This document shows, one piece after another, positions 1,066 to 39,924 of a DNA stretch of 64,000 bases (its first letter is position 1; every line of letters starts with the position of its first letter). The stretch is from the NCBI GenBank assembly GCA_965235115.1, contig OZ249439.1, forward strand, positions 8,122,001 to 8,186,000, given 5' to 3'. A model generated the notes under the pieces. The model was not told the origin of the DNA and did not search any database. It saw only the letters and a list, made by a program, of their open reading frames with translations. The DNA comes from Laetmonice hystrix (lineage: Eukaryota). The position numbers and the translations under genes are program-made.

Positions 1066-2147
1066 TGTAATATGGGACACTGTTAATTATCACTGTAATA
1101 TGGGACAGTAACCTTAACTATGACGTGTGGGACATTGATAAATATCACTGTAATATGGGACAGTAACCTTAACTATGACGTGTGGGACACTGTTAATTAT
1201 CACTGTAATATGGGACAGTAACCTTAACTATGACGTGTGGGACATTGATAAATATCACTGTAATATGGGACAGTAACCTTAACTATGACGTGTGGGACAT
1301 TGATAAATATCACTGTAATATGGGACAGTAACCTTAACTATGACGTGTGGGACATTGATAAATATCACTGTAATATGGGACAGTAACCTTAACTATGACG
1401 TGTGGGACATTGATAAATATCACTGTAATATGGGACAGTAACCTTAACTATGACGTGTGGGACATTGATAAATATCACTGTAATATGGGACAGTAACCTT
1501 AACTATGACGTGTGGGACATTGATAAATATCACTGTAATATGGGACAGTAACCTTAACTATGACGTGTGGGACATTGATAAATATCACTGTAATATGGGA
1601 CAGTAACCTTAACTATGACGTGTGGGACATTGATAAATATCACTGTAATATGGGACAGTAACCTTAACTATGACGTGTGGGACATTGATAAATATCACTG
1701 TAATATGGGACAGTAACCTTAACTATGACGTGTGGGACATTGATAAATATCACTGTAATATGGGACAGTAACCTTAACTATGACGTGTGGGACATTGATA
1801 AATATCACTGTAATATGGGACAGTAACCTTAACTATGACGTGTGGGACATTGATAAATATCACTGTAATATGGGACAGTAACCTTAACTATGACGTGTGG
1901 GACATTGATAAATATCACTGTAATATGGGACAGTAACCTTAACTATGACGTGTGGGACATTGATAAATATCACTGTAATATGGGACAGTAACCTTAACTA
2001 TGACGTGTGGGACATTGATAAATATCACTGTAATATGGGACAGTAACCTTAACTATGACGTGTGGGACATTGATAAATATCACTGTAATATGGGACAGTA
2101 ACCTTAACTATGACGTGTGGGACATTGATAAATATCACTGTAATATG
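1066..2147. repeat. 55-bp tandem satellite array, left part (about 19-20 copies), interrupted by the LTR element
   Basis: Unit cactgtaatatgggacagtaaccttaactatgacgtgtgggacattgataaatat recurs with period 55 (taata at 1261 and 1316); copies are near-identical. Confidence 0.97.
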
Positions 2148-2603
2148 TGTTAACATTTCTTTTGGTAGTTGGGAGAATAACTCAGTAGAGTCGTCGCTTG
2201 AGTTTTGAAGCTTTAATTCCTGAGGTACACGGTTGTCTTCTTCGACCAATATGCACCACGCGGTCAGTATATATATTCGTTATCTTCGTCAGTCTCTATC
2301 TCTCCTTCTCTTCTTCAGCATGTCTCCCCTCCTTTAAGGGGGTTTCCGTCATAGTCTAATGGACGGACACCGATCATTGGCCGGTGACCTACGACCAATT
2401 AGCTGGTCGCCCCCTGACTGACTCCTTTGATTGACAGCTACCGCCCTGATGGCTGTCATAGGTATGACGGGCTTGTTCAGTGGTGCATAACGGTCGAAGC
2501 TGAGACAACAATACAGTGCCATACAATGAATGGTATACCACGAGAAAACACACGCTAGGACTACTCTACAACAGGTTACATGGATACAAATGATATCTTA
2601 TCA
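2148..2603 (-). repeat. 3' LTR (456 bp)
   Basis: Plus strand tgttaac...cttatca; no difference from 13504-13959 found by eye; imperfect terminal inverted repeat TGATAA/TTAACA; ATTAAA on the minus strand at 2212-2217 is a candidate poly(A) signal. Confidence 0.98.
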
Positions 2604-2612
2604 TCCTCCCCT
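2604..2612 (-). promoter_or_regulatory. Polypurine tract (PPT)
   Basis: Minus-strand AGGGGAGGA directly abuts the 3' LTR. Confidence 0.85.
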
Positions 2613-3631
2613 GCTTTAATTTACAAACCATCCACTGGTTGTCTTTATAAAATAAGGTATTAGATAACATATATATTATGAAATATCATACAGAAATATA
2701 TATATCGCTTGACAGCTTGCAGTTATTGTTCTCCACCAGGTTATCTTTTCCAAGGTAAAATAACCAAAACCTTTGTTAGTTTCTCTCGTTAAAATAAAAC
2801 TGGGTTATGCAACTCCTTATAAAAGCTCGTATATAAAACTATGGAATCAAATATAATTATCATACCGATACCATAACACAGGGTTCAAACATCATGCGGG
2901 ACGCACCCACTAATTGCGACTTTACGCAAGTAATATTACACATCTACACTATTCAAACTATTTCAAATTTGAACAAAGAACTAAATCCATTACGTCCACT
3001 GAAAGTATGAGCTGGTTCCTCAACCTATATTACAATTAAAATGTTCAGAAATTTGTACCACCTATAATACTCTAGGCTTCTCCAAATCAGAGACGGAAAT
3101 AATCTCGTTTCAACTTTATAACATACACCGCTCATAGTTAATAAACATAGTACATAAAAACGTTCACTTTAAACACAATTTCCTGGAATCACGTGATTAC
3201 ATTTAACTCGTAATGTTATAAATCTGATCCCTAAGTAGTTTCCACCACCCTATATGACATAAAGCATAAACAATATAACGACTACCTTTCTTGAAACTAC
3301 ATTTTTGCGACTATAGTGTTGAGATCATCTGTCCAAACAAACGGGAAACATAACGTCGAAAAAGGTGCATCAACAAATGTCTATGACGTCAGTCTGGGAG
3401 ACGTAAGGACCGCGCTCAGGGGTCCGGTAACGGGTATCCTCCTTAGTCTCGTAGGCGTCGGTGGTGTTCGGGAAAGTCCACGCCAAGTACCTGTCCAAGT
3501 GAACAAAACATGCAGCCACTCAAAGGACAAGGAGCAACACAGCCTAGATTTCCCTATTTTTATGAGACAAGTGGATCTGTGGTTGACGTAGCGACAAAAA
3601 AAATATCTAAGCCTTTCGTTTCCCACCTCCC

Positions 3632-3633
<2 letters not shown>

Positions 3634-3671
<38 letters not shown>
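3634..3671 (-). other. Templated A38 tract (minus strand), 10 nt after the env stop codon
   Basis: Run of 38 T on the plus strand; the minus strand reads CCA TAA AC GTAAGT TC A38 GTGGGAGGTGGGAAA. Confidence 0.9.
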
Positions 3672-3672
<1 letters not shown>

Positions 3673-3681
3673 AACTTACGT

Positions 3682-6258
3682 TTATGGGGTTTCCTCCTGC
3701 AACAATGGATACAATCCTTCCTGATGTTCAGGGACTACTTTCTCATTTTCTCCATCGGTTTGTTTGTCCTTGATGCTGCGCAGGCAGGTTATTGCCCTAT
3801 TCCTCTTTACGACGATTTCCTGACCAAAGGTAGCATTTTTACTTTTTTTCAACAGCAAATCTAGCTGTCGTCCATACCAGCGGGACACGTGGATAGATAT
3901 TTCCATTTTTGTTTCCGTCTCCTCACCGTGGACCACTAGCCTGACGCTGTCATCGGCTCTAATATTGATATAGCTTGACAGCCACTTATGTTCTGCCCAA
4001 ATTTCAAAATTGGACGGGACGAAAATATAGTCAACGTCCTTTTGGAGATGATACAGCTTCATCAGGGGAAAAACCATAACTTTGTCGGGAGTTCCCAATC
4101 TGATGAAAAGTTCGGTCTGGTTCTTTAATTCGTCTGGTACATGCCAGTGTGTGTCAAGGTCCGCAAAGGGTATTGCCACTTTTCTCGCAATGAAATTGAC
4201 AAGTCTTTTAACACAAAGAAACAAACGTTTTAGTGACAGGATGACCAACAATGTCACAACACAAACCAAAAGTATTTCGATCAGTGTGAAAGAATATACT
4301 TTCTCAACGGGCGACGCTGCGGTACTAACGATCGCCTGCTTGGGGAAAGATTTGAGCAAGATTGGCTCAGGTTCCGACATCGCCTCAGCAGTTTGGTACA
4401 TTGATACTAAAATAAGGATTTGCCTGTATTTATAAAAGGCAAATATTCCTGGCAAACACATAATAAAGCCAATAATGACTAAAATGACGGTGGCAGTGCT
4501 TACCGCAGGAAGATTCGACCAATGGCCTATCTGCGACTTCTTAGGCTCATATTCGCGGATCATAGACGCCAAATTATTTAGCGATAATCCGACATGTCCG
4601 ATTTCTTTAATGTAATGGTGGTTTGTATAAGAAGAGTTATCAGTCAAGATTTTGAACTTTTGAGTCAAGAGTGAAGTGTTGTCAAAATCAACACTTATGT
4701 TAAATGTTTTCAACACGGGAATGTTTATTACATTCGTCGGCTCAACCATAGTTACCATGCACTCTGTCGACATGCCTCTTAGAAGGCGTCCCCTCAGCGA
4801 GGCCTGACAATGACAGGGAAGAGTCAAAAGACAGAGTGAGCACGACCTATAAGTTTGAGACCTGCCATCTCCACATAACACAGACATTTGTTGCTCTGGA
4901 GAGGAGACTAAATATCGGGAGTTTCCTAATCCTATAACAACGTCTGGAATCAATTGAGTGGGATGTGCAATAAAATGGCACAACTTCAGTGTTTCATCAA
5001 TTTTGTTTTGATAAAGTGCCCATTCGCAAGTTGAATACTTATTAAAATATCTCAGGAGAGGATTCTTACATGTGACTAAGATGTTTCTGGTACATGTAGA
5101 CATGTCTTCCTCCCGTAGCAGGACATAATGTGTCCCTCTGACGGATACTCCTATGTATCTGTTATTAATAGATATTACGGAATAACCTTTGCCATTATTT
5201 TGGTCCAGTGGCACGGGAAAGGTGCCGATTTGAAACAAATTGAAGTGAGAATCAGCCTGGACCAATGGTACTCGCAGATGTACATATAAACGTCGATGTG
5301 TGTACTGGAAATACGCCAGGTGATTGTTATAAAAAAAACTAAGGTCACCTGTTGCCAAGTCATAACCCTTGTCTAACTGTTCTTTTACTGTAAGTAAAAT
5401 GTCCTTTAAATCAGAAGGTTGTACTATGTCAGAAGTCAATATGCCGACCCGCAGCTGTTCGAACCCCCTCACAAAATCCACAACCTTTTGGTTATATTCA
5501 TTAATTAACAAAATCCTTGCCTGTATAATGGTCACATATGAGGTTAAATAAACTTGCCAGAGTCGAGCCATTGAGTCGTTTTTGTTACGCCGATTCAAAT
5601 CTAATAACATTTTTTCCGTCAAATGTCTGAATTTGGTATTGACCACATCCTGAGTTAGAAATCTTCCTTGAATGAGCGACAAGGCGTGTGCTGTGTCGTT
5701 TATAAAAACCAACGTTTGGTTTTCTAGGAAGGATACTTTCTGCTGAGTCTCTGCCATGACGTCCGCAAGAGCATTCAAATTTTGCTCTATGGGCCGAATG
5801 TCCGTTACCAAGGCTACTCCAAAAAGATTCCTCTGGAGGGAACCTACAAAGCCAAATGGTACCATTCGTCTTTTCCTGGCTTCGGTCTCGGAAACAGGAA
5901 ATTGAAACAGGTCATTTAAAACGTTGTGTGATTTCTGGACCCGTTGGAGTGAATTATAATAAGTCTGATTTAGCTTGTTAAGATATCCCTGGACACCTTG
6001 ACACAATTCAGGGAAGTACGGAGTGGGTGCCAGTTTTGATAGACGGACCCCACACGGTGATATAGGCATTCGTTTAGTCAGGTTCTGTACCTTTGGTCTG
6101 GAAATAGTCAAGACTAACTCCCTGAACTCCGAAGTTTCAACATAAACTTCTGGGAGTTTTTGGAATGTAACGCCATAATGTTCTCTTGAGAGAATACGGG
6201 CGTCGGCATTGTACACCACAAGAGTCAGCAGTATGCCTATCCACCGAAAACAAGCTCT
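3682..6258 (-). CDS. env: Envelope/fusion glycoprotein of the baculovirus-F/errantivirus-Env type, main exon (858 aa) with a C-terminal extension
   Basis: Signal-peptide h-region RACFRWIGILLTLVVYNADA; furin site RKRR (5866-5877) followed by fusion-peptide-like MVPFGFVGSLQRNLFGVA; heptad-like helices; Cys pattern CTRNILVTC..CEW..LCHF..CSLC..PCHC; N-glycosylation sequons; TM1 about 4432-4494, TM2 about 4231-4290. Confidence 0.92.
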   Translation of the reverse strand, partial: RACFRWIGILLTLVVYNADARILSREHYGVTFQKLPEVYVETSEFRELVLTISRPKVQNLTKRMPISPCGVRLSKLAPTPYFPELCQGVQGYLNKLNQTYYNSLQRVQKSHNVLNDLFQFPVSETEARKRRMVPFGFVGSLQRNLFGVALVTDIRPIEQNLNALADVMAETQQKVSFLENQTLVFINDTAHALSLIQGRFLTQDVVNTKFRHLTEKMLLDLNRRNKNDSMARLWQVYLTSYVTIIQARILLINEYNQKVVDFVRGFEQLRVGILTSDIVQPSDLKDILLTVKEQLDKGYDLATGDLSFFYNNHLAYFQYTHRRLYVHLRVPLVQADSHFNLFQIGTFPVPLDQNNGKGYSVISINNRYIGVSVRGTHYVLLREEDMSTCTRNILVTCKNPLLRYFNKYSTCEWALYQNKIDETLKLCHFIAHPTQLIPDVVIGLGNSRYLVSSPEQQMSVLCGDGRSQTYRSCSLCLLTLPCHCQASLRGRLLRGMSTECMVTMVEPTNVINIPVLKTFNISVDFDNTSLLTQKFKILTDNSSYTNHHYIKEIGHVGLSLNNLASMIREYEPKKSQIGHWSNLPAVSTATVILVIIGFIMCLPGIFAFYKYRQILILVSMYQTAEAMSEPEPILLKSFPKQAIVSTAASPVEKVYSFTLIEILLVCVVTLLVILSLKRLFLCVKRLVNFIARKVAIPFADLDTHWHVPDELKNQTELFIRLGTPDKVMVFPLMKLYHLQKDVDYIFVPSNFEIWAEHKWLSSYINIRADDSVRLVVHGEETETKMEISIHVSRWYGRQLDLLLKKSKNATFGQEIVVKRNRAITCLRSIKDKQTDGENEKVVPEHQEGLYPLLQEETP

Positions 6259-6421
6259 CTGCAAACATAAAGAAGTGACAATATGCCGTAAACCTATAAT
6301 ACGTGAAGATTCATGGTCCTTTTGGAGCCACCTAAGAACAACATCAGTTGTTCAAATTCCAAGAGTGTTACTGAATATACTTGTAATTTTTAAAATGTAA
6401 CTGTGCGATTTAACAACTTAC
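6259..6421 (-). other. Predicted 163-nt spliceosomal intron in env
   Basis: Minus strand gccATG|GTAAGT ... tcacttctttatgtttgcAG|AGA GCT TGT. Splicing is phase 0 and places ATG in front of the signal peptide, which otherwise has no in-frame ATG. Confidence 0.8.
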
Positions 6422-6460
6422 CATGGCTGTTGCTTTCTTCCAATCGCTATTAGCTTCCAT
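6422..6460 (-). CDS. env: Predicted env initiation exon (MEANSDWKKATAM, or only the last ATG)
   Basis: Two in-frame ATGs (6460 and 6424) in good Kozak context (agcATGG, gccATGG), the second ending exactly at the GTAAGT donor. Confidence 0.7.
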
Positions 6461-7139
6461 GCTATCAAAACCAAAGTAGATCTATGGACCACGCTGCACA
6501 GCCGTGTATCCTGATCTCATGTGGAATCCTTATAGGACTCTTTCACATACATGTGTATAACTCTCTGAGGTGAGGGGTCTACTGAGTATCCGGAGACCTG
6601 GGACCGGTTCACCAAGATCTCCAACTCAAACTTTTGACTCCACCCACCCAGAAGATACTAATGAATATTCATGAATAGCATGTTACCAACGCCTACTTTG
6701 CAGGGCTATCACGTGTCTGACTCTGCCTAGAGTCCAAAGTGGACTCTAAATATACAATGAATACCAGATATAATTAAACACCTGTTGCGGCCTCCGTCCC
6801 TCTTATGTTGAAGGCGGTCCGACAGGAACAAATAACAGGGTTACCCTATAATTGGCACCCCTTGATACAGACCATACTACGAGTCTGGTGGCATTTCACA
6901 CCCAGGTATACAACTGTAGTACCTGCCGTCTTTGTCGAACAGTAAAGCAACATCATTCTATTGCAGTCATGTAACCATCTTGTCTCTCTAACTAGCAGAC
7001 AAAGGTGGGTGATACAACAAAGGTTCAATTACGGGCTGCGGTCAAGCGGCTTATTTCCGACCACCCCTTTGTTGACCGGCCGTAAAGTCGCGGTGGTAAT
7101 GCAACCATGTGTTGTTTCTGCTATCAGCCGCTGTAGCGA

Positions 7140-7376
7140 CTATCCATTCACACCATATGTAAAGTAACATGTGGGAATGACTAAGCTTTGAAGTTTATGT
7201 GGCTTTACTTCAAGTGAATGTTTATCGCCGTGTAATCCCTCAATATAAATGCGGGAATAGACATGGTGGTTTGTGTAATGGTTAGTACCCCTTTGGCCGG
7301 AATCTAAAAACAATCCCAACGGTGGCAATTTCCTAGGTTTATTGCTATTCACACGAATCATCTGAGGGGTTTCCAT
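7140..7376 (-). CDS. Possible 78-aa accessory ORF between pol and env
   Basis: ATG in gtaATGG context about 45 nt downstream of a strong acceptor (tttcttcctgcttttcccCAG, AG at 7419-7420); no recognisable motif. Confidence 0.3.
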   Translation of the reverse strand: METPQMIRVNSNKPRKLPPLGLFLDSGQRGTNHYTNHHVYSRIYIEGLHGDKHSLEVKPHKLQSLVIPTCYFTYGVNG

Positions 7377-7531
7377 TACCACTAGGACATTACTCGAGGC
7401 AAACTCTTAACTGAAATACTGGGGAAAAGCAGGAAGAAATGATTTCGTTATATTACTTCCCACGGGTTAAAAATTGAAATCAAAAAGAGCTAAAGTTTAG
7501 AAAAATAAATCTACCCCTTATATGGTTAACT

Positions 7532-10500
7532 TTAATCGAGTTTTCTCAAATTTCTATTGCGTAGGTTATACCTTAGCTCTGGTACATCTAAATCTCCGTC
7601 AATATATTTGCACCTTGCCTCTTTATTTAGGAATGATTCTGGGACCCAGACATTATCACCGTCTTGATAACTCACTAGGACGATAAGTTCGCCATTCCTC
7701 TTGTTGAGTTTATCAATCGCCTTTATTGGGAAAAAAGGACCTGTGCCGGCTTTCTTTGCTTTGGGTACCTTCTGGTCATCAGAATCTATTGCCTCATCTT
7801 CACTCAGTGCATCTGACTCCTCAGCTTCAATTTCGCCGTCAGAATAAACTGACTCTGCATCATCATCAATTTCATCTTCTTGAACCGGATCTGAGATAAA
7901 ACTATCGTCAGGGAAATCGCATTCCTCGAGCTCAGCAGGATCCTCATATTCCACCTCGAACTCGGGCCACCTTTCCTGTAGTTCTTCTCGATTTAGGCTC
8001 TTCTTTAGTCTATGAGTTGTGACAGGTTTGGTCATGAATTTTCCGGTCGTGGTGTGTTTCAACCACACCGTACTGTCGGTATGAAACGCTACTATAACGT
8101 AGGGACCATGGAAAATTTTAGCCAACTTCAGTTTTGTTGTCTGATCATTTAGTCTGGGCCAAAACAACCACACCCTATCGCCTTCACTTAGTTTGGGGTC
8201 ATGAACGTGTTTGTCATACCGAAGCTTCATGTTCTTTTGAGTTTCCTTAAAGGTCACTCGAGACTTTTCATGAGCATTTTTCTGGGTTTGGAGTACTTCA
8301 GCAAACCGGTCCTGAACCGTGCCATCTCCGCCCAGATCAAGCTTCACATTGGTTTCTATGGGGTTTAGTGGGTCGTATCCGTGGCAAAGTAGAAAAGGTG
8401 TTACCCCCAACGAGTACGCCTCCGTGGTGTTCAGAGCAAACAGTACCTCTGGAATACTTTCGTCCCAGTTATTCTGTTTTTCATTCACAAAAGTTCTTAA
8501 CACGTTTAATACTGACCTGTTTGCCCTTTCTACTAAACCACTAGTTTGCGGATGAGCAACTGTTGAAAAAGACTGAGTGATATTATACCGTTCACACATT
8601 ATCTTAAATTCCTCTCCCACAAAGCATTTTCCATTATCGCTTATAATTCTCCGTACCCCTCCGACTCTACAAATGACATTGGCAAAGAATCTCTCTGCCA
8701 CTGACTTAGCCGTGAGGTTAGGCAACGGAAAGGCAATGGTATATCTCGAGTAGTAGTCCACAACTACTATCAGGTGTCTGTTACCTTTCCTTGATCGTGG
8801 GAGCCTTTCTAACGCATCAATGTTAACGATATGCCAAGGCCTAGGACTAGGATCCCTCAGTGTGAGCGGCGGCCGAATAGGATGAGTCATCCGTTTGGTT
8901 TGAGCGCACACATCACATGAGTTACAATATCTGTGAATATCTTGACACATGCCAAACCAGAAATACTTTGTCCTCATAGCGCTAAGCATCTTTTGGGAAC
9001 TCAGATGAGCGCCAATCAGTGAGTCGTGATGCACCTCCAAGATCACTTTCCTTAGATTCCTTGGGATAACCAACCTCGCATGTGTCTCTGCTTTAGGACC
9101 CAATGTCGTATGGATGTTATACAGAATATCATCACTGATTATGAAATTCTCCTCCAAGATCGTCACCCTTTTTGCTCTGGCCTCATCCTCGGGGAGTTCT
9201 TTGTCCTTTAAGAATTTGATTAAATCTGAGCTAAATTCATCCCTCACCTGTGCATCTCTAACACACTGTGCTGATAAACCTAGTCCTTCAAATGTTAATC
9301 TATACTGAGTTTGCAAAATATCAGAATATTTCAGTCGCTTACGGTTGTTTGGGGACTTTTTGTTTGATCTCTGGGATGAACTGACCTCGTCTGCCTTGAC
9401 TTGACCCAGACTGTTTATGGGCAGTTCCTCGACTTTCGGCAAATCTAGCTCTTTGGGATCCTGGTACAGATCGTTGATGACGCCCATTATTTGGGTTCTG
9501 TCTGCAATTGCGCTTGCATCTGTGATCTGACTTAACTCAAGGCATCTTTCAATGAACTCCTCAACTCCCGGTGAGATGACCTCTACTTTATCTTGCTCTT
9601 CTGGTCTTGAAAGCGCATCGGCGACAACATTGCTCTTACCTTTTATATGTTCAATCTCGAACTGGAATTGATTTAGGAAAGCTCGCCATTTGCTTTGCCT
9701 CAAGGTGAACTTGCCAGAATCTCCCAAGATATATTTCAGAGCTGAATGGTCAGTCCTTATTTTGAATTTCCTGCCAGTTAAATACACTTTCCAGTACTCG
9801 ACTGAGTAACATATTCCCAGTAGTTCCTTGTCAAGTGTACTGTACCTGTTTTGACTTTCCCCAAACTTTTTACTTAGGAAAGCTACTGGGCGTTCCCTAT
9901 TGTCCTGATCGAGCTGACTAAGGCAGCCACCGATTCCAACTCCAGACCCGTCAGTGGTCAAAATGAATTCCTTTTGGAAATCGGGATACATCAAAACAGT
10001 ATCTGACGTCAAGGTATCTCGAAGTGTCTCAAAAGCCTTCTGATGTGTTTCTGTCCATTCCCATTTACTTTCACCTTTTGTTAGACCATACAAAGGATTA
10101 GCAAGTTTGCCATACTTTGGAATAAAGCGGCGATAAAATCCGGTGATTCCCAAAAATCGCCTCAACCCTTTGACATTTGTAGGGGGCTGTAAACCTTGAA
10201 TCACCTCAATCTTCTGTGGGTTAGGTTTAATGCCAAACTCTCCGATAACATGGCCTAGGAATAGAGCTTCTTGACACGCTATCTTAGTCTTGCTGGGCTT
10301 CAGTTTAAGCCCTGCGCCAATCAACCTTTGCAGCACCTCTTCCACACCTGCCAAATGTTCTTCCCATGTTCTGGATGGAATAATTATATCGTCAACATAA
10401 ATTAGGATGCTTTCAAAGGGTATACCCCTCATGATCATATCGATCAACATTTGGCAAGATCGTGGGGCATTTTTCATACCCATTGGGAGAACCTTATACC

Positions 10501-10816
10501 TGTACTTACCCATTGGTGTTATGAAGGCGGTTTTGTCTCTATCAGACTCTTTAATGGGGATTTGGTGAAATGCGCTTTGAAGATCGCACACGGTTATGAA
10601 CTTTGGTTTGATTGTACCCACAGCGTCAATAGTATCCTCCACGCGTGGGACGTTGAGGAATTGATCTATTGTTTCCCTATTCAAGCCGCGATAATCACAA
10701 ACCAACCTATCGCCCCCATCGCTCTTTTTGACCAAGAACGCGGGACTTGCCCATGGTCCACTGTTCGTTTCCTCAATTATCCCTAATTCTAATTGATCTT
10801 CGACACACCTTTCCAT
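7532..10816 (-). CDS. pol: Pol C-terminal part: reverse transcriptase, RNase H, integrase, acidic linker, chromo-like domain
   Basis: RT motifs PWASPAFLVKK, DLQSAFHQIP, YVDDII; RNase H TDGSGVGIG, ELLGI, TDHSAL, ADALSR; integrase HHCC (H..H..CDVC), D-D-E (IDAL, SDNG, GLVER) and GPY; C-terminal DNVWVPESFL. Confidence 0.97.
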   Translation of the reverse strand: MERCVEDQLELGIIEETNSGPWASPAFLVKKSDGGDRLVCDYRGLNRETIDQFLNVPRVEDTIDAVGTIKPKFITVCDLQSAFHQIPIKESDRDKTAFITPMGKYRYKVLPMGMKNAPRSCQMLIDMIMRGIPFESILIYVDDIIIPSRTWEEHLAGVEEVLQRLIGAGLKLKPSKTKIACQEALFLGHVIGEFGIKPNPQKIEVIQGLQPPTNVKGLRRFLGITGFYRRFIPKYGKLANPLYGLTKGESKWEWTETHQKAFETLRDTLTSDTVLMYPDFQKEFILTTDGSGVGIGGCLSQLDQDNRERPVAFLSKKFGESQNRYSTLDKELLGICYSVEYWKVYLTGRKFKIRTDHSALKYILGDSGKFTLRQSKWRAFLNQFQFEIEHIKGKSNVVADALSRPEEQDKVEVISPGVEEFIERCLELSQITDASAIADRTQIMGVINDLYQDPKELDLPKVEELPINSLGQVKADEVSSSQRSNKKSPNNRKRLKYSDILQTQYRLTFEGLGLSAQCVRDAQVRDEFSSDLIKFLKDKELPEDEARAKRVTILEENFIISDDILYNIHTTLGPKAETHARLVIPRNLRKVILEVHHDSLIGAHLSSQKMLSAMRTKYFWFGMCQDIHRYCNSCDVCAQTKRMTHPIRPPLTLRDPSPRPWHIVNIDALERLPRSRKGNRHLIVVVDYYSRYTIAFPLPNLTAKSVAERFFANVICRVGGVRRIISDNGKCFVGEEFKIMCERYNITQSFSTVAHPQTSGLVERANRSVLNVLRTFVNEKQNNWDESIPEVLFALNTTEAYSLGVTPFLLCHGYDPLNPIETNVKLDLGGDGTVQDRFAEVLQTQKNAHEKSRVTFKETQKNMKLRYDKHVHDPKLSEGDRVWLFWPRLNDQTTKLKLAKIFHGPYVIVAFHTDSTVWLKHTTTGKFMTKPVTTHRLKKSLNREELQERWPEFEVEYEDPAELEECDFPDDSFISDPVQEDEIDDDAESVYSDGEIEAEESDALSEDEAIDSDDQKVPKAKKAGTGPFFPIKAIDKLNKRNGELIVLVSYQDGDNVWVPESFLNKEARCKYIDGDLDVPELRYNLRNRNLRKLD

Positions 10817-11960
10817 TCTCTTTTTGCTTCTGGTGCCATCCTGTATGGTAATTTCTGAGTATTCTTTGGATGCGCCACCAGCTGTATTTCGTGTTCATAC
10901 AAATGTGTTAAGCCTAATTTCCCGTCAGGGCCCACAAATGCTTGGTTGTTTCTTTTTAATACTTCATTCATCTGTTGCTTTTGATCCTCAGTGATATTTG
11001 CCCCAGAGAAATCTACATTTGGGAGGAAATCTTCTCCCGATTCTACCTTGGGTTTGCTAGTGGCTGAGAATACCGTAGGCTTTTCCCTACCAATCCTTTG
11101 TGTATGCAGGTTGCCAGGCTCATTTGCTCTAACTACATTTATACAGGGTGTTAACTCCATCTCTGCCAAATAACCTAAATTAGACCCTGCCGTCAACGTT
11201 CGAGCATATGGGTTCGTATTCAGCAGTCTGAGATAAACGGTATTATCCTTAACTCTGACCAGTCCTTTCATGGCCAAGATTTTAAGTCTTTTCATGCTTC
11301 CTGAGGTAGTTACTACTCCTTCCCAGCCCTCTAGGTTTTGATCTGAGACCAACTCACCCTTTGTCCAGATCTCACTGTGGGGTGGCATCACTATTGTACG
11401 TGTCAGTTTGATATCAGGGGGTCCATGGATTTTGGGTCTTTTTCTGTTAAAATTTATTGTCATTCCATGATCTCTAAGGAAATCGTTACCCAGGATGACC
11501 TCCGTGGTCAAATATGGCAATACTAGGAAATTTTGCGTGTACTCGGATTCCTTTAGTCGTACCTTTAGGGTTAATTCGCTATCTGCAGAGACAGTTTCGC
11601 CTCCTGCAAACGTGCAATGCATGGTTGTCGGGAGTAGGGTGTGGGGAATATTTCTTTCAACAACCTCATTAAAAATGTCTCTACTAACCACAGATCTTGT
11701 AGCCCCTGTGTCAATTAAGGCTGTGTAACCCCCACCACCAATGAATAGCTGAACGCAGTTGTCCTCAGACAAGATACAATTATGTGGACTTTCCTTACCT
11801 GACCAGTGTTGCTGATGCCCAGTCTTTTGCGGTGAATTCAGGATGCTGTTGTCATTGATCTTGTCTGGACTTGTCTGCACTTGGGGTTTATCGTCAGCAT
11901 TTTGTTTTGGATTTTGTGGAACATTCCACTCCCCCGCAGGAATGTTCCGGTCTAGTTTTC
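10789..11960 (-). CDS. pol: Pol N-terminal part: aspartic protease plus degenerate dUTPase-like domain
   Basis: LIDTGATRSVV (DTG at 11704-11712) and VILGNDFL. The frame is open from the gag slippery site (GKLDRNIPAGEW...QVQTSP). It ends in RT-entry sequence HEIQL..PYRMAPEAKRE and is one base out of frame with the RT ORF. Confidence 0.95.
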
Positions 11961-11961
11961 C
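11918..11961 (-). promoter_or_regulatory. -1 ribosomal frameshift signal at the gag-pol junction
   Basis: G GAA AAC directly before the gag TAG, 6-nt spacer, then a perfect 10-bp stem GGAACATTCC/GGAATGTTCC with an 11-nt loop; the -1 frame is the protease frame. Confidence 0.85.
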
Positions 11962-13445
11962 TGAAACTTAACCAAGAGTGACTTCATCTGCTCCATCATG
12001 GTCTTCATTTCTCCAATCTCTGAAGATGTTGTGTTGGCCAGTGGTTCTGGTGGTGTTACCGTGTTACCAGGAATGGCCTGCATGCTATTTTGAGCGGACT
12101 GTCCGGCAAACTGGTCTCTCCCTTGCATTCTTGTGGTTCTCTGGTATGGGCGTTGATTCCCTTCCGCAAAGTAGCAGTCCTTCTTTTCGTGATTGTTTCT
12201 GCCACATATATCGCACTTTTGGACTTTTCTTTGGGCCCACTCCTTCTGTTGTCCCCAAGATTTAGCTGACGGCTTTCCCTGAGAATTTTGGCCTACCGCG
12301 TTGGGGTGTCTTCCGTTTCTGGTGCGATCCTGATTGAAGTGACTGTGTTGGTAGTGAACTGCACCTTTTGCACCTTGGTTTGAGGACTTCTCCTCCCTAT
12401 TCTTCTCTTTCCTTTGATGTTCTTCTTCCCACTTTGATCTTTTTTCAAGATCAGCGACAGTATGTTTCACCAGGTCAATGCTTGGGAGGGTTTCCCTGAC
12501 CTTTTCTGTTGCCATCTCATACGTCTCGATATCATTATTATGTATGGCGTTCCTGTATTCAGGCAAGACATTGAGTTTAAAAATTATGAACTTCTGTTCA
12601 TTGGACAGCCTAAGGCGTTTTGCCATGCATTCGAACCGACAGATGAATTCTTCCTGTGTTTCTGTCCGTTTCATGTCATTGAGGATCTCTGTGCGCCACT
12701 CCTCACTATTAACGCCAGTGAAACGTTTTAGGAAACGGCGCCTGAAGTCGTCATACCCCTTGAATTCGTGGTCAACATTCGTGTACCACACCAATGCCTG
12801 CTCGTCCAAAAATGACCACATCGTGTTCATCACTTGCCCCTTCCAGTCACTGCCAGACGCATCATACAGATATGTGTGATACGCCTCCATCTTGGAGATC
12901 CAAGTTAGAGGGTCTTCTTTATCTGTTCCCCTAAACGGTTTCGGCGCCTTGACATCAGGACTGATGTTTGGCCTTTTCTCGACGTTTCTCATCTCGTTAT
13001 GTCGAACCATGAATTCCAGCATCTGCTCTTGCTGCCTTTCAGTTTGCTGAACCTGCATACGCATGAATTGTTCCGTTTGCTCCTGCCATATACGCAACAG
13101 CGAACTCACCTGCTGACTGGTTGTATCTTTTGCCGCTGTTTGAGGGTTTTCTTTCTCTCTATTTTGTTGGGGAATTTCTGGCCCTTGGTTTCGTTGTACC
13201 AACACAACCTCAGCGTCTTCCCCTGGCGGATCCATTGTGCGTGATACTAAGGAATGTCTGGTATCTACCTTTACTGTTGTTTTGCCTTCCAGCTGATACA
13301 GGTCGGGCTGGTGTCTCCGTAAGCTGCGCGCTGGTCCAGTTGGCTTGATACTCTTTTCCGCCGAATTTGCGCCTCTTACGGTGGTAAAACTGTCCGATTC
13401 GTCCTCGGATGAGTCAGCAAGTCTGATTCCTCGATGACTTGACAT
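11952..13445 (-). CDS. gag: Gag (497 aa) with capsid region and one CCHC zinc knuckle
   Basis: PKPFRGTDKEDPLTWISKME capsid-start motif; CDICGRNNHEKKDC (12174-12215); Q-rich helical N-terminal region; position immediately after the PBS. Confidence 0.95.
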   Translation of the reverse strand: MSSHRGIRLADSSEDESDSFTTVRGANSAEKSIKPTGPARSLRRHQPDLYQLEGKTTVKVDTRHSLVSRTMDPPGEDAEVVLVQRNQGPEIPQQNREKENPQTAAKDTTSQQVSSLLRIWQEQTEQFMRMQVQQTERQQEQMLEFMVRHNEMRNVEKRPNISPDVKAPKPFRGTDKEDPLTWISKMEAYHTYLYDASGSDWKGQVMNTMWSFLDEQALVWYTNVDHEFKGYDDFRRRFLKRFTGVNSEEWRTEILNDMKRTETQEEFICRFECMAKRLRLSNEQKFIIFKLNVLPEYRNAIHNNDIETYEMATEKVRETLPSIDLVKHTVADLEKRSKWEEEHQRKEKNREEKSSNQGAKGAVHYQHSHFNQDRTRNGRHPNAVGQNSQGKPSAKSWGQQKEWAQRKVQKCDICGRNNHEKKDCYFAEGNQRPYQRTTRMQGRDQFAGQSAQNSMQAIPGNTVTPPEPLANTTSSEIGEMKTMMEQMKSLLVKFQEN

Positions 13446-13483
13446 GTAAGGTTACTAACTCTGCCGCATGATGAGCTGATCGA

Positions 13484-13498
13484 CCGGGTTCTCCTCCA
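13484..13498 (-). promoter_or_regulatory. Primer-binding-site candidate
   Basis: Minus-strand TGGAGGAGAACCCGG begins 5 nt after the 5' LTR; TGG is complementary to tRNA CCA. The primer tRNA is not established. Confidence 0.6.
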
Positions 13499-13503
13499 CT
13501 TTA

Positions 13504-13959
13504 TGTTAACATTTCTTTTGGTAGTTGGGAGAATAACTCAGTAGAGTCGTCGCTTGAGTTTTGAAGCTTTAATTCCTGAGGTACACGGTTGTCTTCTTCG
13601 ACCAATATGCACCACGCGGTCAGTATATATATTCGTTATCTTCGTCAGTCTCTATCTCTCCTTCTCTTCTTCAGCATGTCTCCCCTCCTTTAAGGGGGTT
13701 TCCGTCATAGTCTAATGGACGGACACCGATCATTGGCCGGTGACCTACGACCAATTAGCTGGTCGCCCCCTGACTGACTCCTTTGATTGACAGCTACCGC
13801 CCTGATGGCTGTCATAGGTATGACGGGCTTGTTCAGTGGTGCATAACGGTCGAAGCTGAGACAACAATACAGTGCCATACAATGAATGGTATACCACGAG
13901 AAAACACACGCTAGGACTACTCTACAACAGGTTACATGGATACAAATGATATCTTATCA
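13504..13959 (-). repeat. 5' LTR (456 bp) with TATA-like box
   Basis: Copy of 2148-2603; TATATATA-type run at 13624-13632, upstream (in minus orientation) of ATTAAA at 13568-13573. Confidence 0.98.
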
Positions 13960-14240
13960 TATGGGACAGTAACCTTAACTATGACGTGTGGGACATTGAT
14001 AAATTTCACTGTAATATGGGACAGTAACCTTAACTATGACGTGTGGGACATTGATAAATATCACTGTAATATCTTAGCTATATAACGGTCACTGTAATAT
14101 GGGACAGTAGCTTTGGTGAAAGTAACGTTTACTAATAACAATATGGGACTGCAGCTAGTGATTCTGACGTTTACTGATAACAATCGATGTAGTATGGGAC
14201 AGTAACGCTGTAATGTGGGACACTGTAATGACGTTAACTA
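13960..14240. repeat. 55-bp satellite, right part (about 2 intact units, then degenerate)
   Basis: Resumes in register (tatgggacagtaacc...) exactly after the LTR end and decays after about 14071. Confidence 0.9.
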
Positions 14241-22301: not shown

Positions 22302-22990
22302 CCCTGCTCGCCAACACCTCATCCCTAGGACAGTGCCAGTCGACCCCCACCCCTGCTCGCCAACACCATCTTCCCTAGGACAGTGCCAGTCGACCCCCAC
22401 CCCTGCCCGCCAACACCATCTTCTCTAGGACAGTGCCAGTCGACCCCCACCCCTGCTCGCCAACACCATCTTCTCTAGGACAGTGCCAGTCGACCCCCAC
22501 CCCTGCTCGCCAACACCATCTTCCCTAGGACAGTGCCAGTCGACCCCCACCCCTGCCCGCCAACACCATCTTCTCTAGGACAGTGCCAGTCGACCCCCAC
22601 CCCTGCCCGCCAACACCATCTTCCCTAGGACAGTGCCAGTCGACCCCCACCCCTGCCCGCCAACACCATCTTCCCTAGGACAGTGCCAGTCGACCACCAC
22701 CCCTGCCCGCCAACATCTTCTCTAGGACAGTGCCAGTCGACCCCCACCCCTGCCCGCCAACACCATCTTCTCTAGGACAGTGCCAGTCGACCCCCACCCC
22801 TGCCCGCCAACACCATCTTCCCTAGGACAGTGCCAGTCGACCCCCACCCCTGCCCGCCAACACCATCTTCCCTAGGACAGTGCCAGTCGACCCCCACCCC
22901 TGCCCGCCAACATCTTCTCTAGGACAGTGCCAGTCGACCCCCACCCCTGCTCGCCAACAACATCTTCTCTAGGACAGTGCCAGTCGACCC
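22302..22990. repeat. 50-bp minisatellite (about 14 copies)
   Basis: ccctgcycgccaacaccatcttcyctaggacagtgccagtcgacccccac; period 50. Confidence 0.95.
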
Positions 22991-23463
22991 CCCCCCCCCC
23001 GTCTTGTTCACCCGGCCGACCTACTGAGTCAATATTGGCTGAGACAGCAGAGGGACCATTAGCTCTCCTGTGGATAAAAAGTCACAGGCTTGGCTTTCCC
23101 CTCCTCCTGATGTTATGCCGTTTTGTGCTCACATTGTTGTGTTTCCCGCCCCTCTAATGTTAATGCTTTCTGCTATTGTTGTGGTATTCTGTGCCTAGAC
23201 TATTATGTTTTCTGGTACTATCCCGTTTGTGTTTTCTGCTCCTATTGTTGCCGCCATTACTCCTGCTAACTACAAGTTTTCGTGTTGCTCCTGCCCCAAC
23301 TCCTGCTGCTCTGTCGACATTGTAAACACTGCTGCAGTTATTGACCCTTGGCAGCATTCACAGGGCACCCAGGATCTCTCCTTACATCATTAGTCCCACT
23401 TTCTCGATGGCGTGTGAAGGTCGATTGTTTTGATCAGACGGAGCCGTTCCAGTGGTAAAACTT

Positions 23464-24292
23464 CGTCCAGCCAGACCTGGGCAGGCCCGACCACCGTCCA
23501 GCCAGACCTGGGCAGGCCCGACCACCGTCCAGCCAGACCTGGGCAGGCCCGACCACCGTCCAGCCAGACCTGGGCAGGCCCGACCACCGTCCAGCCAGAC
23601 CTGGGCAGGCCCGACCACCGTCCAGCCAGGCCTGGGCAGGCCCGACCACCGTCCAGCCAGGCCTAGGCAGGCCCCACCACCGTCCAGCCAGGCCTAGGCA
23701 GGCCCGACCACCGTCCAGCCAGACCTGGGCAGGCCCGACCACCGTCCAGCCAGACCTAGGCAGGCCCGACCACCGTCCAGCCAGACCTGGGCAGGCCCGA
23801 CCACCGTCCAGCCAGGCCTAGGCAGGCCCGACCACCGTCCAGCCAGACCTGGGCAGGCCCGACCACCGTCCAGCCAGACCTGGCCAGGCCCGACCACCGT
23901 CCAGCCAGACCTGGGCAGGCCCCACCACCGTCCAGCCAGACCTGGCCAGGCCCGACCACCGTCCAGCCAGACCTGGGCAGGCCCGACCACCGTCCAGCCA
24001 GACCTGGGCAGGCCCGACCACCGTCCAGCCAGACCTGGGCAGGCCCCACCACCGTCCAGCCAGGCCTGGGTAGGCCCCACCACCGTCCAGCCAGGCCTGG
24101 GCAGGCCCGACCACCGTCCAGCCCGACCAGGACAGGCCCGAGCCACCCGACCACCGTCCAGCCCGACCAGGACAGGCCCGAGCCACCCGACCACCGTCCT
24201 ACCAGGCCGAGACTGACCCCACCACCGTCTTGCCCGACCAGGGCAGGCCCGAGCCACCCGACCACCGTCAAGCCAGGACCGACCCGAGCCAC
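23464..24292. repeat. 31-bp GC-rich minisatellite, degenerating rightwards
   Basis: cgtccagccagacctgggcaggcccgaccac; period 31. Confidence 0.95.
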
Positions 24293-38028: not shown

Positions 38029-39750
38029 CCCCCTCCCCACCTCCCACCCCACACAGACAGCCTCAGCCTGGACGTCATGGCCACCCCGCCTCTCCACCCC
38101 ACACAGACAGCCTCAGTCTGTACGTCATGGCCTCCCCGCTCCGCACCCCACACAGACAGCCTCAGTCTGTACGTCATGGCCTCCCCGCTTCCCACCCCAC
38201 ACAGACAGCCTCAGTCTGTACGTCATGGCCACCCCGCCTCTCCACCCCACACAGACAGCCTCAGTCTGTACGTCATGGCCTCCCCGCTCCGCACCCCACA
38301 CAGACAGCCTCAGTCTGTACGTCATGGTCTCCCCACCTCCCCACCCCACACAGACAGCCTCAGTCTGTACGTCATGGCCTCCCCGCCTCCCCACCCCACA
38401 CAGACAGCCTCAGTCTGTACATCATGGTCTCCCCGCCTCCCCACCCCACACAGACAGCCTCAGTCTGTACGTCATGGCCTCCCCGCTTCCCACCCCACAC
38501 AGACAGCCTCAGTCTGTACGTCATGGCCACCCCGCTTCCCACCCCACACAGACAGCCTCAGCCTGTACGTCATGACCTCCCCACCCCACACAGACAGCCT
38601 CAGCCTGTACGTCATGACCTCCCCACCCCACACAGACAGCCTCAGCCTGTACGTCATGACCTCCCCACCCCACACAGACAGCCTCAGCCTGGACGTCATG
38701 GCCTCCCCGCTTCCCACCCCACACAGACAGCCTCAGTCTGTACGTCATGGCCACCCCGCTTCCCACCCCACACAGACAGCCTCAGTCTGTACGTCATGAC
38801 CTCCCCGCCCCACACAGACAGCCTCAGTCTGTACGTCATGGCTTACCCGCCCCACGCAGACAGCCTCAGTCTGTACGTCATGGCCTCCCCGCCGCCCCAC
38901 CCCACACATACAGCCTCAGTCTGTACGTCATGGCCACCCCGCCTCCCCACCCCACACAGACAGCCTCAGTCTGTACGTCATGGCTTACCCGCCCCACGCA
39001 GACAGCCTCAGTCTGTACGTCATGGCCTCCCCGCCGCCCCACCCCACACATACAGCCTCAGTCTGTACGTCATGGCCTCCCCGCTCCCCACCCCACACAT
39101 ACAGCCTCAGTCTGTACGTCATGGCCACCCCGCCGCCCCACCCCACACAGACAGCCTCAGCCTGGACGTCATGGCCTCCCCACCTCCCCACCCCACGCAG
39201 ACAACCTCAGTCTGTACGTCATGGCCACCCCGCCTCCGCACCCCACACATACAGCCTCAGTCTGTACGTCATGGCCACCCCGCCGCCCCACCCCACACAG
39301 ACAGCCTCAGCCTGGACGTCATGGCCTCCCCACCTCCCCACCCCACACAGACAGCCTCAGTCTGTACGTCATGGCCACCCCGCCGCCCCACCCCACACAG
39401 ACAGCCTCAGTCTGTACGCCATGGCCTTCCCACCTCCCCACCCCACACAGACAGCCTCAGCCTGTACGTCATGGCCTCCCCACCTCCCCACCCCACACAG
39501 ACAGCCTCAGTCTGTACGTCATGGCCTCCCCACCTCCCCACCCCACACAGACAGCCTCAGCCTGGACATCATGACCTCCCCGCTTCCCATCCCACACAGA
39601 CAGCCTCAGTCTGTACGTCATGGTCTCCCCACCTCCCCACCCCACACAGACAGCCTCAGTCTGTACGTCATGGCCTCCCCACCTCCCCACCCCACACAGA
39701 CAGCCTCAGTCTGTACGTCATGGCCTCCCCACCTCCCACCCCACATAGAC
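38029..39750. repeat. 50-bp C-rich minisatellite with 39-bp deletion variants
   Basis: ccccacacagacagcctcagtctgtacgtcatggcctccccacctcccca. Confidence 0.95.
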
Positions 39751-39924
39751 GGTAGGATGGCGACACTGTCGGCAGGATGGCGACACTGTCGGCAGGATGG
39801 CGACACTGTCGGCAGGATGGTGACACTGTCGGCAGGATGGTGACACTGTCGGCAGGATGGCGACACTGTCGGCAGATGGCGACACTGTCGGCAGATGGCG
39901 ACACTGTCGGCAGGATGGCGACAC
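39751..39924. repeat. 20-bp minisatellite directly abutting the 50-bp array
   Basis: ggcaggatggcgacactgtc, about 8-9 copies. Confidence 0.92.

What the first reader, a model, noticed from the sequence alone, without database searches (positions are those of the whole stretch)
3685..4431. Env continues 250 aa past its anchor: possible second membrane protein ending in an ALIX-type LYPxL late domain
Seen: after TM1 come KYRQ, a short hydrophobic stretch ending A-E-A (ILILVSMYQTAEA), about 30 residues, a second strong TM (FTLIEILLVCVVTLLVILSL), a roughly 180-aa globular-looking domain, and LYPLL (3700-3714) near the C-terminus. Gag lacks Gly2 for myristoylation, and I found no PTAP/PSAP, PPxY or YPxL motif in it. 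Established: A-x-A is a signal-peptidase site; LYPxL recruits ALIX/ESCRT in retroviral budding; typical F/Env tails are short. Inference: env is a polyprotein releasing a matrix-like budding protein, moving membrane targeting and ESCRT recruitment from Gag to env.
Basis: partly seen in the sequence, partly recalled or inferred. Interest (0 to 1): 0.85.

Follow-up and report, generated by a model that had tools for sequence, protein, structure and literature searches.

The report
Fusion-protein gene with extra membrane module
The envelope gene of a young, intact retrovirus-like element continues 249 codons past its membrane anchor into a conserved second membrane-spanning module of unknown fold, which may be cut off as a separate assembly protein, though neither the cut nor the proposed budding motif could be confirmed.

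Summary
Window 2148-13959 (minus strand) is an intact Ty3/gypsy-type LTR element with identical LTRs, gag, pro, pol and a baculovirus-F-type env of 860 codons. After the F anchor (TM1, residues 587-611) the same frame runs on through KYRQ, a short hydrophobic stretch ending A-E-A, a 30-residue stub, a second strong TM, about 180 residues and LYPLL six residues from the end. An open frame this long has a chance probability of about 2e-7.

The extension is not private to this copy. The only relatives among 1.84 billion representative proteins are three env fragments from one ENA assembly. One of them aligns with env 506-755 at 37% identity with a single one-residue gap, in one frame across TM1.

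Charge distribution, cysteine pattern and the conserved signal-peptide-like segment favour a cytosolic C-terminal domain and make signal-peptidase cleavage plausible. Cleavage is inferred, not shown.

The C-terminal 105 residues, including LYPLL, have no detectable relative, so conservation of the motif is untested. Such a motif somewhere in the element's proteins is expected by chance in 47% of shuffles. It also fits a tyrosine sorting signal. Two structure predictions failed (pLDDT 38).

Verdict: a real, undescribed variant; the mechanism is only partly supported.

The parts
2148..13959 (-). Whole LTR element (11,812 bp), a Ty3/gypsy type carrying env
   Evidence: 456-bp LTRs, 100% identical, with TG..CA ends and a 4-bp target duplication; gag, pro, pol and env ORFs with Pfam domains
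13504..13959 (-). 5' LTR
2148..2603 (-). 3' LTR, preceded in element orientation by a purine tract at 2604-2617
11952..13445 (-). gag (497 aa; starts M-S-S; Ty3_capsid-like)
10789..11880 (-). Protease ORF, in the -1 frame relative to gag
7532..10816 (-). pol (RT, RNase H, integrase), in the -1 frame relative to pro
3682..6264 (-). env open reading frame: 860 codons plus stop, with no ATG ahead of the signal peptide
6259..6424 (-). Candidate env start codon (6422-6424, in a gcc-ATG-g context) followed directly by GTAAGT; candidate 163-nt phase-0 intron at 6259-6421 ending in a pyrimidine tract and CAG. Seen by eye, not tool-predicted.
6199..6258 (-). N-terminal signal peptide of env (h-region WIGILLTLVV, c-region ending A-D-A)
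4453..6003 (-). Baculo_F (PF12259) match, residues 88-604; includes the RKRR furin-type site at 5866-5877, followed by a hydrophobic fusion-peptide-like stretch
   Evidence: PDB 'fusion protein' chains of 623-631 residues matched
4432..4506 (-). TM1, the anchor of the F-type protein (residues 587-611)
4381..4431 (-). Signal-peptide-like segment: n-region KYRQ, h-region ILILVSM(Y), c-region ending A-E-A (residues 612-628); the putative signal-peptidase site follows A628
4291..4380 (-). 30-residue stub (629-658) with the conserved LLK..FP motif, inferred to be lumenal
4231..4290 (-). TM2 (659-678), carrying LIEILL, which is invariant in all four sequences and includes a Glu; 55-60% identical to relatives
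3685..4230 (-). C-terminal domain (679-860): a basic juxtamembrane helix with a conserved Cys, then a part conserved up to about residue 755, then about 105 residues with no known relative
3700..3714 (-). LYPLL, six residues from the C-terminus

Best explanation
The env gene of this F-type, env-carrying Ty3/gypsy element encodes two membrane modules in one reading frame. The signal peptide sends the F ectodomain into the ER and TM1 stops transfer. After a four-residue basic turn (KYRQ), a short hydrophobic segment re-inserts into the membrane with its A-x-A end on the lumenal side. A 30-residue stub then lies in the lumen, TM2 crosses back, and the last 182 residues are cytosolic. The most likely processing is a cut by host signal peptidase after A628. 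That would give a normal-sized F glycoprotein with a hairpin or short-tailed anchor, and a 232-residue type I membrane protein made of a tiny ectodomain, a Glu-containing TM and a cytosolic domain. This cytosolic domain probably acts in trafficking and assembly, linking the non-myristoylated capsid protein to the membrane that carries F. Its terminal YPLL would serve as a cytosolic short linear motif, either a sorting signal or a late domain. Shown: the ORF, its conservation and colinearity, and the motif pattern. Inferred: the topology, the cleavage and the function.
For: The frame is open over 249 codons past TM1 (P about 2e-7). The element is young and apparently intact, with identical LTRs. 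An exhaustive profile-free search found relatives only as env fragments of related elements. P0001 lies directly after a 497-aa Baculo_F gene call in a gag-PR-RT-IN context. P0001 aligns with env 506-755 at 37% identity with one single-residue gap, reading through TM1, the signal-like segment, TM2 and the domain in one frame. Identity by segment: ectodomain stub 41%, TM1 40%, TM2 55-60%, domain 701-755 42-45%. The n/h/c pattern is kept although its sequence has diverged: KYRQ, then ILILVSM, then ..AEA here, against RTRK, then VILMLSTI, then ..AAAA in P0001. Its c-region resembles that of env's own N-terminal signal peptide, which ends A-D-A. Net charge is +4 in the 15 residues after TM2 and 0 in the 15 before it. 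One juxtamembrane Cys is conserved, with no conserved Cys pairs, whereas the ectodomain has 12 Cys. The NQT sequon is not conserved in relatives. Precedents exist: an internal signal peptide cut by signal peptidase and a matrix-like glycoprotein tail in phleboviruses (PMC4974537), and Env-dependent budding of a non-myristoylated Gag in foamy viruses (PMC7828637).
Against: There is no experimental or transcript evidence. No SignalP or DeepTMHMM run was possible, so topology and cleavage rest on rule-based reading. The h-region has only 7-8 residues, the lower limit for a signal peptide, and sits four residues after TM1. In the third fragment (P0003) the equivalent c-region is T-rich rather than A-x-A. 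The last 105 residues, including LYPLL, have no detectable relative. Both AlphaFold2 models were unusable, at pLDDT 37.9 and 37.6, and Pfam and PDB gave nothing for the extension. No similarity to any matrix protein was found.
Confidence: 0.45

Rival explanations
1. There is no cleavage. The F-type Env is one polypeptide with a long, multi-pass tail made of TM1, a short re-entrant segment, TM2 and a cytosolic domain. The tail regulates trafficking, fusion or incorporation, and YPLL acts as a tyrosine-based YxxPhi sorting or endocytosis signal rather than an ALIX site.
For: The same ORF, conservation and charge data fit this reading. YPLL matches YxxPhi. Tyrosine and di-leucine motifs in F-protein tails control surface expression and budding in Newcastle disease virus (PMC8694109 and PMC9909845, listed). 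Long Env tails exist: lentiviral Env has about 150 aa (abstract of 10.1101/2021.02.08.430194). The h-region is very short for an efficient signal peptide.
Against: The small -3/-1 residues after a basic-then-hydrophobic segment are kept in two lineages even though the sequence differs. TM2 is more conserved than TM1 and carries an invariant Glu, which is unusual for a mere tail segment.
Confidence: 0.3
2. The topology has two spans. The short hydrophobic stretch does not cross the membrane, TM2 runs from cytosol to lumen, and the 182-residue domain is lumenal or external, forming a second small ectodomain. LYPLL would then be outside the cytosol and irrelevant to ESCRT.
For: ILILVSMY is too short for a classical TM helix. 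Two N-x-S/T sequons lie in the domain.
Against: The charge bias is +4 after TM2 against 0 before it. There are no conserved Cys pairs, and the NQT sequon is lost in all three relatives.
Confidence: 0.1
3. The second module is made on its own, either by internal initiation at Met629 or from an alternatively spliced mRNA, rather than by proteolysis of a fusion protein.
For: A Met directly follows A-E-A. env appears to depend on splicing for its own start codon. Donor- and acceptor-like sites occur near TM1 (by eye).
Against: The Met is not conserved at that position in P0001. Without a preceding signal the type I orientation of TM2 would be harder to obtain. In P0001 the frame also runs uninterrupted through TM1.
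Confidence: 0.08
4. The extension is an accident of this copy: a lost stop codon, or a recently captured host cDNA, as the A-run just after the stop might suggest.
For: A 38-nt A-run begins 13 nt after the env stop. The extension has no Pfam or PDB relatives.
Against: The extension is shared, in frame and colinear, with an element only 37% identical. No cellular homologue was found among 1.84 billion representatives. Its GC and GC3 lie within the range of the element's other genes.
Confidence: 0.03

Closest known systems
F-type env of env-carrying Ty3/gypsy elements ('errantiviruses', including the 'ancient' metazoan groups; Chary & Hayashi, eLife 2026, PMC13524379) and baculovirus F (Pfam PF12259)
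   Same: LTR element with gag-pro-pol-env order. The env has a signal peptide, a furin-type site followed by a hydrophobic fusion peptide, a Baculo_F match (E 2.6e-13) and a TM anchor.
   Different: The Pfam model and the solved 'fusion protein' chains (623-631 residues) end shortly after the anchor, whereas this env has 249 more residues with a second TM. The paper analysed ectodomains only. Full-text searches for 'tail', 'cytoplasmic tail', 'late domain' and 'ESCRT' returned no occurrences.
Phlebovirus Gn/Gc glycoprotein precursor (PMC4974537)
   Same: A TM anchor is followed by an internal signal peptide cut by host signal peptidase. The signal can stay attached as a second span. A glycoprotein cytoplasmic tail does the job of a matrix protein.
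   Different: There is no sequence relationship. In phleboviruses the downstream product is the fusion protein with a large ectodomain. Here the downstream product would have a 30-residue ectodomain and a large cytosolic domain, and the cytosolic loop before the signal is 4 residues rather than tens.
Foamy virus Env (Elp/LP-SU-TM) and Env-dependent budding (PMC7828637)
   Same: Gag has no myristoylation or membrane-targeting signal. Budding depends on Env. The Env precursor yields an extra membrane-anchored subunit with a cytoplasmic domain that stays in the particle.
   Different: In foamy viruses the extra subunit is N-terminal, has type II topology and is released by furin-type cleavage. 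Here it would be C-terminal, type I and released by signal peptidase. There is no sequence similarity.
ALIX-binding LYPxnL late domains of retroviral Gag
   Same: The five-residue pattern is present near the C-terminus of a putatively cytosolic, hydrophilic tail.
   Different: It lies in an env-encoded protein, not in Gag. Its conservation is unknown and its statistical weight is low. It also fits YxxPhi.
Long cytoplasmic tail of lentiviral Env
   Same: An Env with a cytosolic region well over 100 residues, with trafficking motifs and a role in assembly (abstract listed).
   Different: That Env is from a different fusion-protein family, with no second strong TM or internal A-x-A site. No homology was detected.

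Membership tests
Baculo_F / F-type class I fusion glycoprotein (PF12259) | Profile match above the curated threshold | tested here: met
   49.9 bits against a cut-off of 24.1, E 2.6e-13, residues 88-604 on profile positions 86-580 of 609; PDB 'fusion protein' chains matched at E about 9e-6
Baculo_F / F-type class I fusion glycoprotein (PF12259) | N-terminal signal peptide, a furin-type site followed by a hydrophobic fusion peptide, and a C-terminal TM anchor | tested here: met
   Read directly from the translation: the h-region plus A-D-A; RKRR at 130-133 followed by a hydrophobic stretch; TM1 at 587-611
Baculo_F / F-type class I fusion glycoprotein (PF12259) | Protein ends shortly after the anchor (about 30 profile positions remain) | tested here: not met
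   256 residues follow the end of the profile match
Env-carrying Ty3/gypsy LTR element (errantivirus-like) | LTRs with TG..CA ends, a short target duplication, a purine tract, gag-PR-RT-RNaseH-IN order and env downstream of pol | tested here: met
Env-carrying Ty3/gypsy LTR element (errantivirus-like) | Placement in a pol phylogeny among described errantivirus clades | not tested
   No reference pol sequences were available in the tools
Signal-peptidase-processed viral glycoprotein precursor | A stop-transfer TM followed by a segment with n, h and c regions and small uncharged residues at -3 and -1 | tested here: met
   KYRQ / ILILVSM / ..A-E-A here and RTRK / VILMLSTI / ..A-A-A in P0001. This is rule-based only; no SignalP run was possible.
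Signal-peptidase-processed viral glycoprotein precursor | Two separate polypeptides are actually produced | not testable with these tools
   Needs protein data from the host
ALIX-type LYPxnL late domain | Motif present in a cytosolic, accessible part of a structural protein | tested here: inconclusive
   The motif is at 851-855. Cytosolic location is inferred from charges. The models are too poor to judge disorder.
ALIX-type LYPxnL late domain | Motif conserved among relatives | tested here: inconclusive
   No relative covers residues 756-860. The DNA of the related loci was not retrievable.
ALIX-type LYPxnL late domain | Binds the ALIX V domain | not testable with these tools
   -
Retroviral or paramyxoviral matrix protein | Sequence or fold similarity to a known matrix protein | tested here: not met
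   No Pfam family at E<0.1, no PDB chain at E<=10 with either the single sequence or the profile, and no usable model for fold search

The most novel reading that the evidence does not exclude
One lineage of ancient, F-type env-carrying Ty3/gypsy elements turned env into a two-product glycoprotein precursor. Host signal peptidase would release a previously unknown type I membrane protein with a 30-residue ectodomain, a Glu-bearing and highly conserved TM, and a cytosolic domain of about 180 residues with no known fold. This protein would act as the element's membrane-bound matrix or budding factor, possibly also as a channel-like small membrane protein, and would recruit ESCRT through a C-terminal LYPxL. 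Membrane targeting and late-domain function would then sit in env rather than gag.
Probability: 0.12. Interest if true: 0.8.

Novelty: new variant of a known kind. Interest (0 to 1): 0.5.

Why it matters
Env-carrying Ty3/gypsy elements were recently shown to be ancient and widespread in animals, but only their ectodomains have been analysed. How their capsids, whose Gag has no membrane-binding signal, meet the envelope is unknown. A conserved env-encoded membrane protein with a cytosolic domain would be a concrete candidate for that link. It would also be a second, independent case, after foamy viruses, of envelopment being delegated to env. If the extension is instead an uncleaved tail, it is still the first long, multi-span tail described for an F-type fusion protein. 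It also marks a sub-lineage that can be searched for in invertebrate genomes.

Tried and rejected
- Whole-env search of the 5.8-billion-protein set: no hit.
- Profile search with the four-sequence alignment: only the same two clusters.
- Search with the last 116 residues: no candidate.
- Exact look-ups of gag, pol and three env-derived proteins read from internal Met codons: not in the collection.
- DNA of the three related loci: not retrievable, because the sample file is too large. One look-up failed for lack of a free slot.
- Scans of JGI metagenome contigs and IMG/VR, each with the alignment and with the whole env: no relatives.
- Pfam on the extension: only sub-threshold noise, E >= 0.1.
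- PDB by sequence and by profile: nothing.
- AlphaFold2 on the four-sequence alignment and on the domain alone: pLDDT 37.9 and 37.6. I therefore did not run fold search, which would give meaningless matches.
- Internal homology of the extension to gag, pro, pol or the ectodomain, or to anything elsewhere in the window: none.
- Rfam on the whole window: nothing.
- Pfam on the pol C-terminus, for a chromodomain suspected by eye: no hit.
- Supplementary files of the eLife paper are not held.
- The first repeat search was swamped by a 31-bp satellite and was replaced by a self-BLAST.
- Recent host-cDNA capture, suggested by the A-run, was rejected because the extension is shared with a 37%-identical element.
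- GTAAGT just after the stop codon was rejected as evidence. The element's sense strand has three occurrences, and about three are expected by chance.
Full report
**What is there**

The finding lies in the last gene of an LTR element on the minus strand. A self-comparison shows two 456-bp direct repeats, 2148-2603 and 13504-13959, that are 100% identical. They have TG..CA ends and are flanked by a 4-bp duplication, TATG. A purine tract abuts the 3' LTR. The element interrupts a 55-bp minisatellite, which continues in register on both sides.

Between the LTRs lie four genes:
- gag, 497 aa, with a weak Ty3_capsid match.
- A protease ORF.
- pol, with RVT_1, RNase H and integrase domains.
- An 860-codon ORF at 3682-6264 that matches Pfam Baculo_F (49.9 bits, cut-off 24.1, E 2.6e-13).

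The element is therefore an env-carrying Ty3/gypsy element of the F type. This class was recently described across invertebrate phyla (PMC13524379). All four ORFs are uninterrupted and the LTRs are identical, so the copy is young.

**Checking the observation**

The translation and the coordinate mapping confirm each item:
- TM1 at 587-611, KYRQ at 612-615, ILILVSMYQTAEA at 616-628.
- 30 residues at 629-658.
- TM2 at 659-678.
- 182 further residues, with LYPLL at 851-855, six residues from the end.

TM1 and TM2 are the only two strong hydropathy peaks in the protein. The Baculo_F profile match stops inside TM1, at profile position 580 of 609. Solved 'fusion protein' chains that match env are 623-631 residues long. 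The extra 250 residues are thus truly outside the family's normal architecture.

A stop-free run of 249 codons at this base composition has a probability of about 2e-7. Gag begins M-S-S. Gag, pro and pol contain no P[TS]AP, PPxY or YPxL.

**Is the extension a feature of the family or an accident of this copy?**

An exhaustive phmmer search with residues 612-860 against 1.84 billion representatives gave only two hits. With one further cluster member these make three fragments, all from one ENA assembly.

P0001 (260 aa) lies immediately after a 497-aa Baculo_F gene call, in a gag / protease / RT-RNase H / integrase context, and is followed by a further 88-aa call. The env region there is split into three consecutive gene calls, so it has at least two breaks. 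Together the three calls span about 2.5 kb, close to the 2.58 kb of env here.

P0001 aligns with env 506-755 at 37% identity with a single one-residue gap. It reads in one frame from the end of the ectodomain through TM1, the short hydrophobic segment, the stub and TM2, and 77 residues into the domain. Identity by segment is as follows:
- Ectodomain stub: 41%.
- TM1: 40%.
- Signal-like segment and stub: 23-24%.
- TM2: 55-60%.
- Residues 701-755: 42-45%.

The extension is therefore ancestral to at least two well-diverged lineages. It is fused to F in both and is as constrained as the ectodomain. This rules out a lost stop codon or a recent capture.

The evidence has limits:
- All three relatives are degraded fragments from one sample.
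- Their DNA could not be fetched.
- Nothing matches residues 756-860.
- Four scans of metagenome and viral contig collections found no other relative.

**Topology and processing (inference)**

The ectodomain must be lumenal. It has a signal peptide, a furin-type site, 8 sequons and 12 cysteines. KYRQ therefore lies on the cytosolic side of TM1.

The 15 residues after TM2 carry four K/R and no acidic residue. The 15 residues before TM2 are neutral. By the positive-inside rule, the C-terminal side of TM2 is cytosolic too.

Both conditions hold only if the chain crosses the membrane once more between TM1 and TM2. The only candidate is the short hydrophobic segment. That segment has the three-part form of a signal peptide: a basic n-region, a 7-8-residue h-region with Kyte-Doolittle mean 2.6-3.1, and a c-region with Ala at -3 and -1. 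The same form is kept in P0001 with a different sequence: RTRK, then VILMLSTI, then a run of Ala. Its c-region also resembles that of env's own N-terminal signal peptide, which ends A-D-A.

Further points are consistent with a cytosolic C-terminal domain:
- One juxtamembrane Cys is invariant, making it a palmitoylation-type position.
- There are no conserved Cys pairs.
- The NQT sequon is lost in all relatives.

Signal-peptidase cleavage at an internal signal following a stop-transfer anchor is established for phlebovirus Gn/Gc. There the signal can remain as a second span of the upstream protein (PMC4974537). From established knowledge, flavivirus and hepacivirus envelope proteins behave similarly.

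I therefore consider cleavage after A628 the single most likely outcome, with confidence of about 0.45. It would give a 628-residue F precursor and a 232-residue type I protein. No predictor for signal peptides or topology was available, the h-region is at the lower length limit, and one degraded relative has a T-rich c-region. An uncleaved multi-span tail is therefore a serious rival (0.3).

**The C-terminal domain and LYPLL**

No family, solved structure or internal paralogue matches the domain. Two AlphaFold2 runs gave pLDDT 37.9 and 37.6, so no fold search was justified. 'Matrix-like' is thus a functional guess without structural support.

There is precedent for the idea. Phlebovirus Gn tails act as matrix surrogates. 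Foamy virus Gag, which lacks myristoylation and membrane-targeting signals, depends strictly on Env, whose precursor yields an extra membrane subunit with a cytoplasmic domain (PMC7828637).

The LYPLL motif is the only late-domain-type motif in the element, but its statistical weight is small:
- YPxL occurs in 4.7% of shuffles of the extension.
- One of the three motif classes occurs in 47% of shuffles of the element's proteome.
- The low figure for 'within the last 20 residues' (0.3%) is post hoc.

The same four residues match the generic YxxPhi sorting signal. Tyrosine and di-leucine motifs in F-protein tails are known to regulate surface expression and budding (PMC8694109, PMC9909845).

**Comparison with what is known, and novelty**

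The element and its F-type env belong to a known kind. The extension is not covered by the Pfam model. It is also not mentioned in the one systematic study, which cut out ectodomains between the signal peptide and the first TM. Full-text searches of that paper for 'tail', 'cytoplasmic tail', 'late domain' and 'ESCRT' returned no occurrences.

I file it as a new variant of a known kind. The conserved second membrane module is solid. Its processing and function are hypotheses.

**Other things seen**

- env has no ATG before its signal peptide. The frame is open up to 6351 without one. An ATG in a strong context at 6422-6424 is followed at once by GTAAGT, and a pyrimidine tract plus CAG ends at 6259, in phase with the ORF. 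This splice model was seen by eye and no tool predicts it.
- A pure 38-nt A-run lies 13 nt after the env stop. It remains unexplained.
- pro and pol are each in the -1 frame relative to the gene before, with short overlaps.

The breaks in the related env are given as a count only.

Noticed in passing
window 6259-6424 (-): The env ORF has no ATG ahead of its signal peptide. An ATG in a gcc-ATG-g context at 6422-6424 is followed directly by GTAAGT. A pyrimidine tract plus CAG ends at 6259, in phase with the ORF, so a 163-nt intron would supply the start codon. Unspliced, that ATG meets a stop after four codons.
   Followed up: partly
window 3634-3671 (-): A pure 38-nt A-run begins 13 nt after the env stop codon, inside the element and about 1 kb upstream of the 3' LTR. 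Its origin is unexplained; it could be a relic of a polyadenylated env RNA or a microsatellite. The 1.03 kb between it and the LTR is AT-rich and has no convincing ORF.
   Followed up: partly
window 1073-2147 and 13960-14072: The element is inserted into a 55-bp minisatellite, with 19.5 units on one side and about 2 on the other. The array continues in register across the insertion, with the target duplication TATG.
   Followed up: yes
window 10789-11967 (-): gag, pro and pol lie in three frames, each -1 relative to the one before. The overlaps are about 13 nt (gag/pro) and about 100 nt (pro/pol), which suggests two successive -1 ribosomal frameshifts. Slippery sites were not looked for.
   Followed up: partly
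window 4231-4290 (-): TM2 carries a Glu inside the motif LIEILL, which is invariant in all four available sequences. TM2 is more conserved (55-60%) than the F anchor TM1 (40%). This points to a specific intramembrane interaction or channel-like role rather than simple anchoring.
   Followed up: partly
window 7535-7834 (-): The pol C-terminus has an acidic, Ser/Asp/Glu-rich stretch followed by a segment that looks chromodomain-like by eye. Pfam gives no hit even at E<=10.
   Followed up: yes
window 14500-63500: The rest of the window is packed with more than 20 minisatellite arrays, with units of 19-144 bp and up to 60 copies. Several are very GC-rich, for example 22302-24282 and 38032-39924. 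Most long ORFs there are repeat artefacts.
   Followed up: no
window 24121-24210 (-): ARAGORN calls a 90-nt tRNA-Pro(CGG) inside a GC-rich tandem array. Rfam finds no tRNA there, so it is probably a false positive.
   Followed up: partly
window 6265-7531 (-): A spacer of about 1.27 kb without a long ORF lies between the pol stop and the env ORF.
   Followed up: no
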